A DNA stretch of 64,000 nucleotides, taken from the IMG/VR virus record IMGVR_UViG_3300043446_004613, positions 62,001 to 126,000 of that record; one strand, written 5' to 3'. Both the position numbers and the translations under genes were made by a program. The notes beneath the pieces were generated by a model. That model saw only the letters and a list, made by a program, of their open reading frames with translations, searched no databases and had not been told where the DNA came from. Position 1 is the stretch's first letter. Each line of letters begins with the position of its first letter. Positions 2,876 through 38,652 of this stretch are shown here, piece by piece.

Positions 2876-3306
2876 TGACAATCGCAGAAGGCTTAATACT
2901 AAGGTTGTTTCGACCGCCTAAGTTTCTTGTTGTCGAAGCACATGCAGGCATCAGCACGTTACTTAGTGCGCACTATGACTGCGACTTGGTGCAGGCAGGT
3001 TCGGCAGTTGAAGCAGCTGACTGTCTAGCATCCGGCGTGTATGACCTGATCATTTTGGATGCTGCGACACTTAACGGGAGCACAGCAACCCTGATCAAGA
3101 ACATTCAGACCATGTGTCCAGATACACCCACCGTAGCGTTTAATGCTGTTAATACTGCGTTCGACGAAGACGCGTTGGTTACGGTATTCAATGGGGCGAT
3201 AAAAATTGAACTGCTGGAACATCTGTTCAAGCAGTTCAAGATTAAGCTGCGCACCCGCGAGATCGCGGAGTACTGTGCAAGCATTGACCGGACGGCTGCC
3301 GCTTAG
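2875..3306 (+). CDS. single-domain response-regulator receiver (REC), atypical
   Basis: FLVVE, YDLIILD (phospho-acceptor Asp position), CPDTPTVAF; CheY-like size. Confidence 0.7.
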   Translation: MTIAEGLILRLFRPPKFLVVEAHAGISTLLSAHYDCDLVQAGSAVEAADCLASGVYDLIILDAATLNGSTATLIKNIQTMCPDTPTVAFNAVNTAFDEDALVTVFNGAIKIELLEHLFKQFKIKLRTREIAEYCASIDRTAAA

Positions 3307-3680
3307 CGTGGCGCTTGGGTAACGATCGAGTGGATTTTCTGGAGCAGCATGTCGTGCGACGGCGGCAACTGGACGTTGCGGGCTTCGTCGAGAACATGTT
3401 GCAGCAAGTTGACCGGTACTTCCTTTCCGGCCATCAGGGCTTCAATGATCTGCTTGTCTTGATCACTGTTGGCGAGGTGCGCGAGGATCAGCACCAGCAC
3501 GTCTTTCATCTGGCTCACTTCACGCGGAGAAAATTGGCCGGGAGGCTGCATGCCTTCACGCCCGCCGCCCATCACACGGGAGAGGTCATCACCACGGCGC
3601 GGCATCGGACGACGACCCGGATCACGGGGCGGCATCGACGGCATATCATCATTTTCACGAATAAGGTTTTTTGCGTTCAT
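3303..3680 (-). CDS. hypothetical protein with LIRE leader (MNAKNLIRE...)
   Basis: Start reassigned from 3956 because that extension runs through the tRNA-like gene; TATTTA motif 8 nt upstream of 3680. Confidence 0.65.
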   Translation of the reverse strand: MNAKNLIRENDDMPSMPPRDPGRRPMPRRGDDLSRVMGGGREGMQPPGQFSPREVSQMKDVLVLILAHLANSDQDKQIIEALMAGKEVPVNLLQHVLDEARNVQLPPSHDMLLQKIHSIVTQAPR

Positions 3681-3892
3681 ATCGTCCATAAATACGGTTG
3701 CCAGTCCAGACTGGCGTGGAACCACTGTCCCGGTTCTGGCGAGAGGTTCTCTCCCTCTGTCAACTCTGCTTGTTCTAAGGCGTTGAGTTTTACCAAATGG
3801 TGGCTGACTAATCTCTTCGATTAACAGCGTGCAGCCAAAGCGCTTCAACTGCACGCCTGTCCAGAATTGTACCAAACCATCAGCCGTTAAAA

Positions 3893-4006
3893 TGGTGGCT
3901 AGGGCTGGATTTGAACCAGCGTTCATACGATGCCTATGCTTTAGGGTGCCCCCCACACAGGAGACTCAGAGTGCCCTCCGGGCGTCTACCGCTGCGCCAC
4001 CTAGCC
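3893..4006 (-). ncRNA. tRNA-like RNA (114 nt) with canonical acceptor, D and T arms but a 61-nt non-canonical central region
   Basis: GGCTAGG/CCTAGCC-A-CCA acceptor stem; D arm GCG-CAGCGGTAGA-CGC; T arm GCTGG-TTCAAAT-CCAGC; no standard 5-bp/7-nt anticodon arm. Confidence 0.8.
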
Positions 4007-4014
4007 ATGACCGT

Positions 4015-4043
4015 ACTGTATACACGTTATTGCTTATCGTCAA
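4015..4043 (-). promoter_or_regulatory. sigma70-type promoter for the tRNA-like RNA
   Basis: TTGACG-17 nt-TACAGT ending 8 nt before the RNA 5' end. Confidence 0.75.
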
Positions 4044-4443
4044 CAGCAGCTTTTAACAAAGTTTCGTCAGGGCAGAGCATAACGGCGGCCTGTTGGTAAA
4101 TCTGACCTTCCAGTTCGTTACCGTCGGCAAAAAATTTACCGGCCATCTCCGAGGCTTTGATCCAAGCGTCTTTTCCGTGTTGAATTTCCAGCTGGCGACA
4201 GACCAGTGATGGTCGCCACAAGCGCTCTACCGGGCGTACGCTGCCGCAGTCGAGGAATACCTGAATACCGGTCAGGATAAACAGCGCACTGTTGGCTGCC
4301 TCTGCCGGATCAGCACCTTCACTAGCCATCAACAAGGCCAGCATGTTGGCTAATTTCTCGTTCTCGCCGCCTTCCTTTAGCGGCAGCAACTGAATCGGTT
4401 CAGGTTTTGCTTCGGGCGATGGTGTTGGTTGTGGAGTATCCAT
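4027..4443 (-). CDS. hypothetical protein (138 aa)
   Basis: ORF in operon run. Confidence 0.6.
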   Translation of the reverse strand: MDTPQPTPSPEAKPEPIQLLPLKEGGENEKLANMLALLMASEGADPAEAANSALFILTGIQVFLDCGSVRPVERLWRPSLVCRQLEIQHGKDAWIKASEMAGKFFADGNELEGQIYQQAAVMLCPDETLLKAAVDDKQ

Positions 4444-24980: not shown

Positions 24981-25145
24981 CTAATTACCGTAGTATTCAA
25001 TCTCAAGCAGTTGGGCGACGAGCGAAGCGTCAGCTTGCCTGTCTTGGCGCGTGCGCCGGTCTGCCCACTTATGCTTGTGTGGTTTGCACATGGCGCAGCT
25101 ACAGCCCGGCTTGTTGGATAACTTTCGTTTAAGACGATTGTTCAT
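24981..25145 (-). CDS. small basic Cys/His protein (54 aa; not in ORF track)
   Basis: MNNRLKRKLSNKPGCSCAMCKPHKHKWADRRTRQDRQADASLVAQLLEIEYYGN; ATGA overlap with upstream gene. Confidence 0.65.
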   Translation of the reverse strand: MNNRLKRKLSNKPGCSCAMCKPHKHKWADRRTRQDRQADASLVAQLLEIEYYGN

Positions 25146-25552
25146 AGCGGCTCAATGGTTACCACGCCTTCCAGAGTGAAAATGTTCACGTGGATATGGT
25201 CGGCAGTAGCTAAAGTCGTATTACTGTATACAGGTTTAATTCCGTCGGCAACGGAGATTGTTATGTGTGGGTAGTCGTTTTCGCTTTCGACGCCGACAAG
25301 GGCCGCCTGCGCTTTACCGTCATCAGCGTAAGCTACGACAGGTATGTGTACGATTTCACCTTCAAGGTCACGGTATTTGGACAGAGTCGCTTCATCCGGG
25401 TCATAGGCCATCGTGACGTGATGCGCTATTACACGTTCCAGCGTCGGCGGGATGCGTCGCAAAAGCTCGGCACGGCTGGCCGGTGTCAGCACGGCACCGA
25501 CAAAGAGTCCGGTGCTTTCGAGCATCTGCTTTACAACATTCTGCGCGTTCAT
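25142..25552 (-). CDS. 2H phosphoesterase-family protein
   Basis: Two HxT motifs (AHHVTM, PHITIS). Confidence 0.72.
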   Translation of the reverse strand: MNAQNVVKQMLESTGLFVGAVLTPASRAELLRRIPPTLERVIAHHVTMAYDPDEATLSKYRDLEGEIVHIPVVAYADDGKAQAALVGVESENDYPHITISVADGIKPVYSNTTLATADHIHVNIFTLEGVVTIEPL

Positions 25553-37934: not shown

Positions 37935-37963
37935 TTGACTGTATACATTTGTGTGCGTACAGT
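37935..37963 (+). promoter_or_regulatory. sigma70-type promoter for the tRNA/ncRNA/tmRNA cluster
   Basis: TTGACT-17 nt-TACAGT ending 5 nt before the tRNA. Confidence 0.8.
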
Positions 37964-37968
37964 CTGTT

Positions 37969-38045
37969 CGCGGGGTGGAGCAGCCCGGTAGCTCGTCTGG
38001 CTCATAACCAGAAGGTCGTTGGTTCAAATCCAACCTCCGCAACCA
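37969..38045 (+). tRNA. tRNA-fMet (CAT), initiator type
   Basis: Full cloverleaf, C1:A72 mismatch, anticodon loop CTCATAA, encoded CCA. Confidence 0.95.
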
Positions 38046-38234: not shown

Positions 38235-38652
38235 GGGCGCGTACTGGTTTCGACTTTGATCGTAGCGGTGACGCCGACATGCCGAGGATGATGGTTGGCC
38301 TCGTAAAACAAACCGTCAAAAGTTAAATGCTGAAGAAGCTGAACTGAACAGCCTCCTCGCGGAAGCCGAAAGCATTTTCAACAATGCTGACGAAGTTCTC
38401 GCGAACGCTGAAGCTGTGGCGGCCTAACGGCCACCACCCGTTTACCGATCGATGCCTGCTGAATCGAGTAAACGCCATTAGCAGGACAGTGTGGATGCCG
38501 AGCAACGTCGGCGTTGGCCCGTGCCAGCCTATGGCGCAACCGGCAGGGTTTTCAGTTGTCGCTCTGATCCTGCCGCACAAAAGCGAAGAAGCATGTGAAT
38601 GGTGCAGTGTTACGGACATAGGACAGGGGTTCAACTCCCCTCGCGTCCACCA
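38235..38652 (+). ncRNA. ssrA: transfer-messenger RNA (tmRNA)
   Basis: 5' GGGCGCGTACTGGTTTCGAC; 3' GGGGTTCAACTCCCCTCGCGTCCACCA; G3-U wobble; pk1 CGAGG/CCTCGTAAA; tag ORF 38329-38427 ending AVAA*. Confidence 0.95.

What the first reader, a model, noticed from the sequence alone, without database searches (positions are those of the whole stretch)
3893..4043. Expressed tRNA-like RNA lacking a canonical anticodon arm
Seen: perfect 7-bp acceptor stem, A73 and encoded CCA, a Leu-type D arm (GCG-CAGCGGTAGA-CGC) and a perfect T arm. Between them lie 61 nt instead of the usual 22-40, able to form several short hairpins (GGAG/CTCC, GTG/CAC, CCTA-AAGCA-TAGG) with a duplicated GGGCACYCT element. It has its own TTGACG-17-TACAGT promoter, the same -10 box as the tRNA-fMet promoter. 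Knowledge: bacterial LeuRS recognises A73 and the tRNA elbow rather than the anticodon. Inference: a chargeable non-decoding tRNA mimic, for example a decoy for anticodon nucleases, T-box or RelA sensors, or an aminoacyl donor, or a tRNA with a novel small intron.
Basis: partly seen in the sequence, partly recalled or inferred. Interest (0 to 1): 0.8.

Follow-up and report, generated by a model that had tools for sequence, protein, structure and literature searches.

The report
Tandem anticodon-less tRNA mimics in phage
A freshwater jumbo phage carries, behind a promoter of its own, two adjacent small RNA genes that keep the amino-acid-accepting end of a tRNA but have stable hairpins where the anticodon should be, so they cannot read codons and their role is unknown.

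Summary
On the minus strand, 3893-4006 encodes a 114-nt RNA with a perfect 7-bp acceptor stem, A73, an encoded CCA, a D arm, a canonical T arm and the tRNA core bases (U8, A14, G15-C48, G18G19). The 61 nt between the D and T arms contain no anticodon arm. The Rfam tRNA model scores it 35.1 bits (cut-off 29) only by skipping 56 nt, and ARAGORN does not call it.

- **Second element.** A cloverleaf RNA at 3798-3885 follows 7 nt downstream. It has the same acceptor top (GGCU/AGCC), A73 and CCA.
- **Promoter.** TTGAC-N18-TACAGT occurs exactly twice in the window, before this pair and before the phage tRNA-fMet.
- **Intron reading.** It is not supported, because no single excision restores a canonical anticodon arm.
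- **Internal hairpins.** Two GGCA-loop hairpins differ only by two compensatory base-pair changes.
- **Relatives.** Related phages have nothing at this gene junction, or a normal amber-suppressor tRNA(CUA).
- **Wider context.** More than 100 other phage contigs carry oversized Leu-type tRNA-like genes.

Expression, charging and function are untested, because no RNA run was listed. My best reading is a pair of non-decoding tRNA mimics, possibly decoys. A disrupted tRNA gene remains a serious rival.

The parts
4015..4043 (-). Promoter-like site: TTGACG (4043-4038), a 17-nt spacer, then TACAGT (4020-4015). The -10 box ends 8 nt before the mature 5' end of element 1.
   Evidence: Found by the consensus scan. 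The pattern TTGAC-N18-TACAGT has only two exact matches in 64 kb, this one and 37935-37963 upstream of tRNA-fMet (my arithmetic puts the chance expectation for exact matches at about 0.03). Relative L379 has TTGCTT-17-TACAGT before its tRNA(CUA).
3893..4006 (-). Element 1, a 114-nt tRNA-like RNA. It comprises the acceptor 5' strand (4006-4000), U8 G9, the D arm (3997-3982), a 61-nt middle (3981-3921), the T arm (3920-3904), the acceptor 3' strand (3903-3897), A73 (3896) and CCA (3895-3893).
   Evidence: Rfam tRNA scores 35.1 bits with a 56-nt skipped insert. ARAGORN makes no call.
3967..3980 (-). Hairpin h1, CGGAG-GGCA-CUCUG. It starts one base after the D stem, which is the anticodon-stem position, but has a 4-nt loop.
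   Evidence: Present in the MFE and centroid structures. The structure with h1+h2 is 6.5 kcal/mol more stable than an anticodon-arm-like alternative with a 10-nt loop.
3933..3961 (-). Hairpin h2, whose inner part is UGGGG-GGCA-CCCUA (3955-3942), extended by an outer 7-bp helix. Twelve unpaired bases (3932-3921) follow before the T stem.
   Evidence: h1 and inner h2 differ at 4 of 14 positions. These are two base pairs, both changed in a compensatory way (C-G to U-A, A-U to G-C). The loop and the closing G-C pair are identical.
3798..3885 (-). Element 2, an 88-nt cloverleaf RNA. It has acceptor GGCUGAU/GUCAGCC, a 6-bp arm with a 7-nt loop, a 14-bp hairpin with a GCGC tetraloop in the anticodon-arm position, a 5-bp arm with a 5-nt loop (no T-loop consensus), A73 (3801) and CCA (3800-3798). 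A 7-nt spacer (3886-3892) separates it from element 1.
   Evidence: MFE -35.9 kcal/mol, z=-3.59, with 0 of 200 shuffles folding as well. A custom scan for acceptor + adjacent hairpin + NCCA gave 4 hits in the window against 0.55 in shuffles, and two of the four are this tandem pair. No Rfam family matches it.
3303..3692 (-). Downstream gene of 129 aa with an Arg/Pro-rich N-terminus and no Pfam family. No terminator is seen between the RNAs and this gene. It serves as the anchor for synteny with related phages.
   Evidence: Homologues are P0003-P0010.
4027..4443 (-). Upstream gene of 138 aa with unknown function. Its last codons overlap the promoter.
   Evidence: It is 44% identical to the ORF at the same position in L384.

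Best explanation
The locus is a small independent transcription unit, made of a promoter plus two RNA genes, inserted between two conserved phage genes. It makes two stable, non-decoding tRNA mimics.

**Shown**
- Both RNAs have a 7-bp acceptor stem with the same first four pairs, plus A73 and an encoded CCA.
- Element 1 also keeps the D/T 'elbow' nucleotides.
- Neither has an anticodon loop. Stable hairpins occupy that position.

**Inferred**
- Host sigma-70 RNA polymerase transcribes them.
- RNase P cuts at each G1.
- The 3' ends are trimmed to CCA, as for the host's and the phage's own tRNAs.

**Speculative**
- The mature RNAs occupy a protein that recognises the tRNA body or acceptor end rather than the anticodon. 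My preferred candidate is a tRNA-cleaving defence nuclease, with a synthetase or another tRNA-binding enzyme as alternatives. The RNAs would then act as a decoy, sponge or competitor.
- The paired GGCA-loop hairpins of element 1 would be an added binding surface.
For: - **tRNA-likeness of element 1:**
- **Core tertiary bases kept while the anticodon arm is lost:** seen in the sequence.
- **Second cloverleaf:** it shares the same acceptor end and lies 7 nt downstream.
- **Shared promoter type:** found exactly twice in 64 kb, both times before tRNA-type genes.
- **Selection on structure:** h1 and h2 differ only by two compensatory pair changes. My estimate that 4 neutral differences would do this is about 0.002.
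- **T arm:** it differs from that of the phage tRNA-fMet by one compensatory pair.
- **Payload-like insertion:** relatives L383 and L384 have only 25-34 nt at this junction, L385 has a promoter plus a small zinc-ribbon ORF, and L380 has a tRNA(CUA). The junction therefore collects self-contained small genes, which argues that the RNAs themselves are the payload.
- **Stability between samples:** the pair is identical in a second sample whose upstream ORF carries a deletion of roughly 30 nt.
- **Precedents:** defence nucleases cleave class-II tRNA-Tyr in the variable arm, and extra phage tRNA copies rescue infection (PMC13096335; PMC11555353 listed). LeuRS charges tRNA-Leu lacking the anticodon and variable arms (PMC9976931).
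- **Wider class:** a large set of phage Leu-type tRNA-like genes without a canonical anticodon arm exists.
Against: - There is no transcript evidence.
- No homologue of either element was found in IMG/VR, one metagenome scan, GTDB genomes or eight related loci, so there is no covariation across species.
- The overall fold of element 1 is not unusually stable (z=-1.16).
- G15-C48 departs from the A15-U48 pair required by E. coli LeuRS.
- Element 2 lacks the D-loop GG and the T-loop consensus, so it cannot form a standard tRNA elbow.
- No tRNA-related enzyme was found nearby. The only hint is a sub-threshold 2H/CPD hit at 25142-25552.
- The binding partner is pure inference.
Confidence: 0.4

Rival explanations
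1. Disrupted tRNA gene or genes. Element 1 would be the remnant of a normal phage tRNA, perhaps the clade's Gln/amber-suppressor type or a copy of a tRNA-fMet-like gene. Its anticodon arm would have been wrecked by a short internal duplication or insertion. Element 2 would be a further degenerate copy or a chance hairpin cluster. Both might still be transcribed but do nothing.
For: - The pair is found only in this phage population.
- Relative L380 has a normal 76-nt tRNA(CUA) 25 nt upstream of the same downstream gene.
- Element 1 reads GGAGG-gca-CUCUGAG-u-CUCC where L380 reads GGAGG-CUCUAGC-CCUCU.
- Both GGGCACYCU repeats resemble the stem-plus-loop GCGCA-CUCUAAA of the L378 tRNA at 10 of 13 positions.
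- There is a direct repeat with a 25-nt period inside the insert.
Against: - All three retained arms are perfectly paired, and every core tertiary base is intact.
- The two repeat copies differ only by compensatory changes.
- The promoter is intact.
- Element 2 has 32 base pairs and z=-3.59.
- By my estimate, the 13-nt resemblances are not significant once all offsets are counted.
Confidence: 0.3
2. Precursor of a real decoding tRNA. Part of the 61-nt middle would be removed, as a small intron or by two cuts, and the ends joined. This would resemble the oversized 'intron-containing' tRNAs reported in Lak megaphages and seen here in locus L040.
For: - Oversized phage tRNAs with inserts of about 60 nt in the anticodon loop do exist. 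They keep an anticodon stem and a plausible loop end, as in L040 5616-6041.
- The Lak phage paper reports such tRNAs (10.1101/356790).
- Removing only 'GCA' from element 1 would leave a 5-bp stem with the 7-nt loop CUCUGAG (anticodon CUG).
Against: - No single excision gives a perfect canonical arm.
- The CUG reading needs a 3-nt excision, two bases at position 26 and a 39-nt variable region.
- It is 6.5 kcal/mol less stable than the two-hairpin fold.
- ARAGORN intron calls across the class give scattered anticodons and intron positions.
- No splicing endonuclease or RNA ligase was found in the window.
Confidence: 0.07
3. Cis-acting processing signals. The two tRNA-like folds would serve only as RNase P/RNase E cutting sites that define and stabilise the 5' end of the downstream mRNA (3303-3692). 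Plant mitochondrial t-elements, and bacterial operons that mix tRNA and mRNA, work this way.
For: - No terminator lies between element 2 and the downstream ORF.
- The elements and the ORF are on the same strand.
- t-elements are an established precedent (PMC1920247, listed).
Against: - Relatives express the same gene with a 25-34-nt gap and no such element.
- A processing signal needs only an acceptor/T minihelix, not the conserved D-arm and elbow bases, the CCA or the paired GGCA hairpins.
- The cassette brings its own promoter.
Confidence: 0.1

Closest known systems
Phage T4 stable RNAs species 1 and 2 (rnaC, rnaD)
   Same: They are two adjacent small stable RNA genes at the end of a phage tRNA cluster (AF158101 70908-71171). 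They have a tRNA-like 3' domain, including a T arm in rnaC, and non-tRNA remainders. To my knowledge they have no assigned function.
   Different: I saw no sequence resemblance by eye. T4 rnaC gets only 17.5 bits against tRNA-Sec and nothing against tRNA. They are longer (119 and 139 nt). Element 1 here keeps a full D arm and elbow and scores above the tRNA gathering cut-off.
Oversized 'intron-containing' tRNAs of Lak megaphages and other huge phages (Devoto et al., 10.1101/356790)
   Same: They are phage tRNA genes too long for bacterial tRNA finders, with an unexplained insert in the anticodon region. Similar genes were seen here in L040, L087, L034 and L009.
   Different: Those genes keep an anticodon stem and a readable anticodon after removal of the insert. 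Element 1 does not.
Phage Leu-type tRNA-like genes with a hypervariable middle (class seen here in IMG/VR, loci L002-L117)
   Same: They have a 7-bp acceptor, a GGUAGACGC-type D arm, a canonical T arm and 45-75 nt between the arms. ARAGORN does not call them as tRNA (108 of 118). They are co-directional with neighbouring genes and sometimes lie in tRNA clusters.
   Different: - **Levitt pair and 3' end:** the class has A15-U48 (U48 in 89/98), A73 in 73/89, and mostly no encoded CCA (4/89).
- **Common layout:** a short single-stranded linker, then one long hairpin ending 2 nt before the T stem.
- **Element 1:** it has G15-C48, an encoded CCA, a hairpin in the anticodon-stem position and 12 free bases before the T stem.

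Homology is not shown.
Minimal tRNA-Leu substrates of E. coli LeuRS (laboratory constructs lacking anticodon and variable arms)
   Same: They show that a tRNA body without an anticodon arm can be aminoacylated. The determinants are A73, G18G19, A20a and the elbow (PMC9976931). Element 1 has A73, G18G19 and the GGUAGA D-loop.
   Different: The constructs keep A15-U48, which is listed as essential. Element 1 has G15-C48. Nothing is known about the host LeuRS.
Phage tRNAs that counter tRNA-cleaving defence systems (T5/T6 tRNA-Tyr against retron-Eco7 and Septu)
   Same: They are phage-encoded tRNA-shaped RNAs whose benefit is to withstand, or dilute the effect of, nucleases that cut the host tRNA body, here the variable arm of a class-II tRNA (PMC13096335).
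   Different: Those are functional decoding tRNAs that replace the lost host tRNA. The RNAs here cannot decode, so only a pure decoy or inhibitor role would be possible, and this is untested.
tmRNA tRNA-like domain
   Same: It has an acceptor stem, T arm and CCA with no anticodon. The same phage encodes a tmRNA at 38235-38652.
   Different: tmRNA has a G3.U70 alanine identity pair, no D stem, pseudoknots and a tag reading frame. Element 1 has C3-G70 and a D stem, and neither element has a tag frame. The only Rfam signal is 12.9 bits (E=1.9) for permuted tmRNA.

Membership tests
tRNA (Rfam RF00005 / canonical cloverleaf) | 7-bp acceptor stem, discriminator base and a 3' CCA (encoded or added) | tested here: met
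   GGCUAGG/CCUAGCC, A73 and an encoded CCA.
tRNA (Rfam RF00005 / canonical cloverleaf) | D arm and T arm carrying the conserved elbow bases (U8, A14, R15-Y48, G18G19, U54U55C56, G53-C61) | tested here: met
   All are present in element 1. None of the loop consensus bases is present in element 2.
tRNA (Rfam RF00005 / canonical cloverleaf) | Anticodon arm: a 5-bp stem with a 7-nt loop containing U33 and a purine at 37 | tested here: not met
   Rfam skips 56 nt at this place. ARAGORN makes no call. The MFE structure has a 5-bp stem with a 4-nt loop.
tRNA (Rfam RF00005 / canonical cloverleaf) | Covariance-model score at or above the gathering cut-off | tested here: met
   35.1 bits against 29, seen only with permissive filters and missed in gathering mode.
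Bacterial tRNA-Leu identity set (E. coli type) | A73 discriminator | tested here: met
   A at 3896. Determinants are taken from PMC9976931.
Bacterial tRNA-Leu identity set (E. coli type) | A15-U48 Levitt pair | tested here: not met
   Element 1 has G15 and C48. The IMG/VR Leu-like class has A15 and U48.
Bacterial tRNA-Leu identity set (E. coli type) | G18G19 and A20a in the D loop | tested here: met
   The D loop reads AGCGGUAGA.
Bacterial tRNA-Leu identity set (E. coli type) | Actual leucylation by LeuRS | not testable with these tools
   This needs an aminoacylation assay.
Intron-containing tRNA | Removal of one contiguous segment leaves a canonical anticodon arm and variable region | tested here: not met
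   Enumerating all excisions gave 0 perfect and 2 poor solutions. ARAGORN intron mode produces a forced tRNA-Pro(GGG) with a mismatched stem.
Intron-containing tRNA | A spliced RNA form exists | not testable with these tools
   No RNA run was listed for this DNA.
tmRNA (one-piece or permuted) | G3.U70, a tag reading frame and pseudoknots, with a model score above the cut-off | tested here: not met
   C3-G70 in element 1. tmRNA_permuted scores 12.9 bits against 47.
Any other curated RNA family (Rfam 15, including Y-RNA-like and ribozymes) | Match to a covariance model | tested here: not met
   Only tRNA passes. The two other hits in 3700-4200 are noise (E 1.9 and 5.8).
   Element 1 matches the search pattern itself (L001).
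   Element 1 has a different layout and a different Levitt pair.

The most novel reading that the evidence does not exclude
Phages widely encode anticodon-less tRNA mimics that keep the acceptor end and elbow. These would be matured by the tRNA pathway, some would be chargeable by LeuRS, and they would work in trans as decoys or inhibitors of tRNA-body-recognising host factors such as defence tRNases, or as amino-acid carriers outside the ribosome. The window's tandem pair would be one divergent lineage of this strategy, with the duplicated GGCA hairpins as the specific bait.
Probability: 0.25. Interest if true: 0.8.

Novelty: new variant of a known kind. Interest (0 to 1): 0.6.

Why it matters
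Phage tRNAs are currently explained by codon supply and, more recently, by replacement of tRNAs destroyed by defence nucleases. An RNA that keeps everything needed to be handled as a tRNA (processing, CCA, perhaps charging) but cannot decode does not fit either explanation. It points to tRNA mimicry as a function in its own right.

Standard tRNA finders and Rfam's fast filters miss these genes. The pattern scans here returned more than 100 phage contigs with comparable oversized Leu-type genes. The class may therefore be common, and I found no paper that describes it. The 334-bp cassette is small enough to test directly in a laboratory host.

Tried and rejected
**Searches for homologues of element 1**
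- Two specific gapped patterns in IMG/VR returned only the source contig.
- A 17-mer D-arm pattern in metagenome contigs returned 120 hits, all coding-sequence coincidences.
- The T-arm + acceptor 21-mer found nothing in 185,579 species genomes.
- A 15-mer D-arm pattern in IMG/VR again returned coding coincidences. The one exception is L423, where the same D arm belongs to a rearranged tRNA fragment in a tRNA cluster.

**Searches through neighbouring genes**
- The 138-aa neighbour has no homologue apart from a fragment of itself.
- Relatives of the glycosyltransferase neighbour are not syntenic and carry no tRNA.

**Expression and population data**
- No RNA runs were listed.
- DNA contigs from the two holding runs show no variants.
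- The second-sample contig L386 is identical across both RNAs.

**Interpretations tested and dropped**
- Intron reading: rejected.
- TAG recoding in this phage: rejected. TAG ends 14 of 50 long ORFs, and in-frame gene pairs are no more frequent for TAG than for TGA or TAA.
- The GGGCACYCU motif is not repeated elsewhere in the window.
- No conserved protein neighbour accompanies the IMG/VR class.

**RNA-repair genes**
- None were found. The only signal is a sub-threshold CPD hit at 25142-25552.

**Literature**
- Six searches found no paper describing this class. The nearest are the Lak phage introns and the defence-evasion tRNA papers.

Full report
**Setting.** The window is part of a 211-kb viral contig, IMGVR_UViG_3300043446_004613, from a freshwater metagenome.
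- Gene content is that of a large tailed phage: baseplate wedge, family-A DNA polymerase, NAD-dependent ligase, DnaB-type helicase, RecA-like protein, a tubulin/TubZ-like protein, lysozyme, many glycosyl- and sulfotransferases.
- It has no DNA-level relative among deposited phage genomes, judged by a blastn search with 2 kb around the locus.
- The standard tools find two RNA genes in the window: tRNA-fMet at 37969-38045 and a tmRNA at 38235-38652.

**Checking the observation.** On the minus strand, 3893-4006 reads as a tRNA in every part except the anticodon arm.
- The acceptor stem is perfect (GGCUAGG/CCUAGCC), followed by A73 and an encoded CCA.
- The D arm is GCG-CAGCGGUAGA-CGC, and the T arm is GCUGG-UUCAAAU-CCAGC.
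- The positions that build the tRNA elbow are all present: U8, A14, G15 with C48, G18G19, and G53-C61.
- The Rfam tRNA model scores 35.1 bits against a gathering score of 29. It does so by treating 56 nt as an insertion in place of the anticodon arm.
- The match appears only with permissive filters, not in the default gathering scan. ARAGORN does not call it.
- The promoter-like site TTGACG-17-TACAGT is present.
- The exact pattern TTGAC-N18-TACAGT occurs only twice in 64 kb. The other copy lies 5 nt upstream of tRNA-fMet.

The word 'expressed' rests only on this promoter inference, because no RNA run holding the sequence was listed.

**The 61-nt middle.**
- The minimum-free-energy and centroid folds place a 5-bp hairpin with a GGCA tetraloop (h1, 3980-3967) exactly where the anticodon stem should start.
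- A second hairpin (h2, 3961-3933) has an inner part with the same shape and loop. Twelve unpaired bases follow.
- h1 (CGGAG-GGCA-CUCUG) and inner h2 (UGGGG-GGCA-CCCUA) differ at four positions. These form two base pairs, both changed in a compensatory way. I estimate the chance of that pattern under neutral divergence at about 0.002.
- An alternative fold with a 5-bp stem GGAGG/UCUCC and a 10-nt loop containing CUCUGAG is 6.5 kcal/mol less stable.
- Enumerating every single excision from the middle gave no perfect canonical anticodon arm.
- ARAGORN's intron mode gives a forced, mismatched solution. Across comparable genes it gives scattered anticodons and intron positions.

The small-intron reading is therefore not supported.

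**A second element.** Seven bases after the CCA of element 1, 3798-3885 folds into a clean cloverleaf.
- It has a 7-bp acceptor GGCUGAU/GUCAGCC, a 6-bp arm, a 14-bp hairpin with a GCGC tetraloop in the anticodon-arm position, and a 5-bp arm with a 5-nt loop next to the acceptor strand. A73 and CCA follow.
- The fold has z=-3.59, and none of 200 shuffles folds as well.
- Its first four acceptor pairs, discriminator and CCA are identical to those of element 1.
- A simple scan for acceptor + adjacent hairpin + NCCA finds 4 hits in the window against 0.55 in shuffles, and two of the four are this adjacent pair. A chance hit directly downstream on the same strand is therefore very unlikely.
- Element 2 lacks the D-loop and T-loop consensus and matches no Rfam family.
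- No terminator follows it, so transcription probably runs on into the 129-aa gene at 3303-3692.

**Evolutionary context.**
- The downstream gene has homologues at 42-63% identity. Eight of their contigs were read.
- L383 and L384 share the order cytidylyltransferase, ORF138 homologue (44% identity), downstream gene, then a response-regulator-like gene. They have only 25-34 nt where the window has 334 nt.
- L385 has a promoter and a small zinc-ribbon ORF at that junction.
- L380 has a normal 76-nt tRNA with anticodon CUA 25 nt upstream of the gene. L378 and L379 carry a similar tRNA(CUA) about 1 kb away, and in L379 it sits behind TTGCTT-17-TACAGT.
- None of these loci holds a tRNA-like element of the window's kind.
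- The pair is therefore a lineage-specific insertion at a junction that collects self-contained small genes.
- A contig from a second sample (L386) is identical over both RNAs, while the upstream ORF carries a deletion of roughly 30 nt.
- Element 1 may descend from the phage's own tRNA stock. Its T arm differs from that of tRNA-fMet by one compensatory pair. Its GGAGG...CUCUGAG...CUCC segment resembles the anticodon arm of the L380 suppressor. These resemblances are suggestive only.
- TAG is an ordinary stop codon in this window.

**A wider class.**
ARAGORN calls none of 108 of the 118 extracted matches as tRNA.
- These genes keep A73 (73/89), U8-G9, A14-A15 and U48 (89/98). They have 43 different acceptor stems and a median length of 108 nt.
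- The commonest layout is a short linker followed by one long hairpin that ends 2 nt before the T stem.
- They have no common protein neighbour, and they occur both inside and outside tRNA clusters.
- Some phages, such as L040, carry three or four oversized tRNAs in a row. Their inserts share a motif and they keep an anticodon stem. These resemble the 'enigmatic introns' of Lak megaphages.
- Element 1 matches the search pattern but differs from the class in its Levitt pair, its encoded CCA and its insert layout. I treat it as analogous, not as a proven member.

**Mechanism.** What the sequence shows is two RNAs built to enter the tRNA maturation pathway that cannot decode.
- I infer sigma-70 transcription, RNase P cleavage at each G1, and 3' trimming to CCA.
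- The review literature confirms that E. coli LeuRS needs A73 and the elbow but not the anticodon or variable arm. It also lists A15-U48 as essential. Charging of element 1 is therefore possible but uncertain, and charging of element 2 is unlikely.
- Defence nucleases that cut the body of class-II tRNAs, and rescue of infection by extra phage tRNA copies, are documented. This makes a decoy or competitor role the most concrete hypothesis.

I put the 'functional non-decoding mimic' reading at about 0.4, a disrupted tRNA gene at 0.3, a cis-acting processing signal at 0.1 and a spliced pre-tRNA at 0.07. The remainder is unassigned.

**Verdict.** This is a real and unusual feature whose function is unresolved. 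The closest precedents are the T4 species 1 and 2 RNAs and the oversized tRNAs of huge phages. I found no paper describing anticodon-less, acceptor-complete tRNA mimics in phages.

Noticed in passing
window 3798-3885 (minus strand): A second, 88-nt cloverleaf RNA lies directly downstream of the flagged element. It has the same acceptor top (GGCU/AGCC), A73 and CCA, and a 14-bp hairpin instead of an anticodon arm. No tRNA or Rfam tool calls it.
   Followed up: yes
window 38235-38652 (plus strand); also L036: The phage tmRNA encodes an unusually long 32-aa tag ending in AVAA. An unrelated phage contig (L036) has a tmRNA with a 24-aa tag 489 nt upstream of its Leu-type tRNA-like gene.
   Followed up: no
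L380 2903-2978 (+), L378 2056-2130 (-), L379 1927-2001 (-): Relatives of this phage each carry a normal-size tRNA with the amber anticodon CUA near the syntenic locus. In the window itself, TAG is used as an ordinary stop codon.
   Followed up: partly
L002-L117 (IMG/VR), e.g. L010, L013, L033, L091: More than 100 phage contigs carry oversized (91-123 nt) Leu-type tRNA-like genes. They have A73, A15-U48, a hypervariable middle and usually no canonical anticodon arm. I found no description of this class in the searched literature.
   Followed up: partly
L040 5511-6143 (also L100, L112, L116, L087): A tRNA-fMet is followed by three or four oversized tRNA genes. Their inserts of about 56-62 nt in the anticodon-loop region share a motif: a hairpin NNUCA-UGUUNG-UGRNN followed by CAGCAA. 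One looks like tRNA-Gly(CCC) with U73. They may be a family of short tRNA introns with an unknown splicing route.
   Followed up: partly
L012 6532-6637, L019 2283-2390 (minus strand), L286 7566-7673 (minus strand): This is a subfamily of the Leu-type class with a conserved insert core (GAGUACUG ... UACUCAAARCAG). A 7-8-bp helix in it is completely different in sequence in the three variants yet always complementary, in a pseudoknot-like arrangement.
   Followed up: no
L290, L367, L369, L276, L332, L324 (bacterial genome contigs): These are bacterial class-II tRNAs with a Leu-type body (A73, a GGUAGACGC D arm, very long variable arms) but non-Leu anticodons: UGG, GCG, GCC and CGC. They could misincorporate leucine, if LeuRS, which ignores the anticodon, charges them.
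   Followed up: no
L423, minus-strand positions about 3004-3140: In a phage tRNA cluster, a tRNA 3' half (anticodon loop CUUAAAA, T arm, CAGCCCC-A-CCA) is followed by a matching 5' half. The 5' half begins GGGGCUG and has a D arm identical to that of element 1. It looks like a permuted or rearranged tRNA gene.
   Followed up: no
window 25142-25552 (minus strand) and 25223-25251: A 136-aa ORF has a sub-threshold match to the cyclic-phosphodiesterase domain of fungal tRNA ligase (21.5 bits against a cut-off of 23). A one-mismatch copy of the TACAGT promoter pattern lies inside it.
   Followed up: no
L386 about 2129-2135 = window about 4248-4282: A second-sample contig of the same phage has a deletion of roughly 30 nt that breaks the 138-aa ORF upstream of the RNA pair. 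The RNAs and all other compared sequence are identical.
   Followed up: partly
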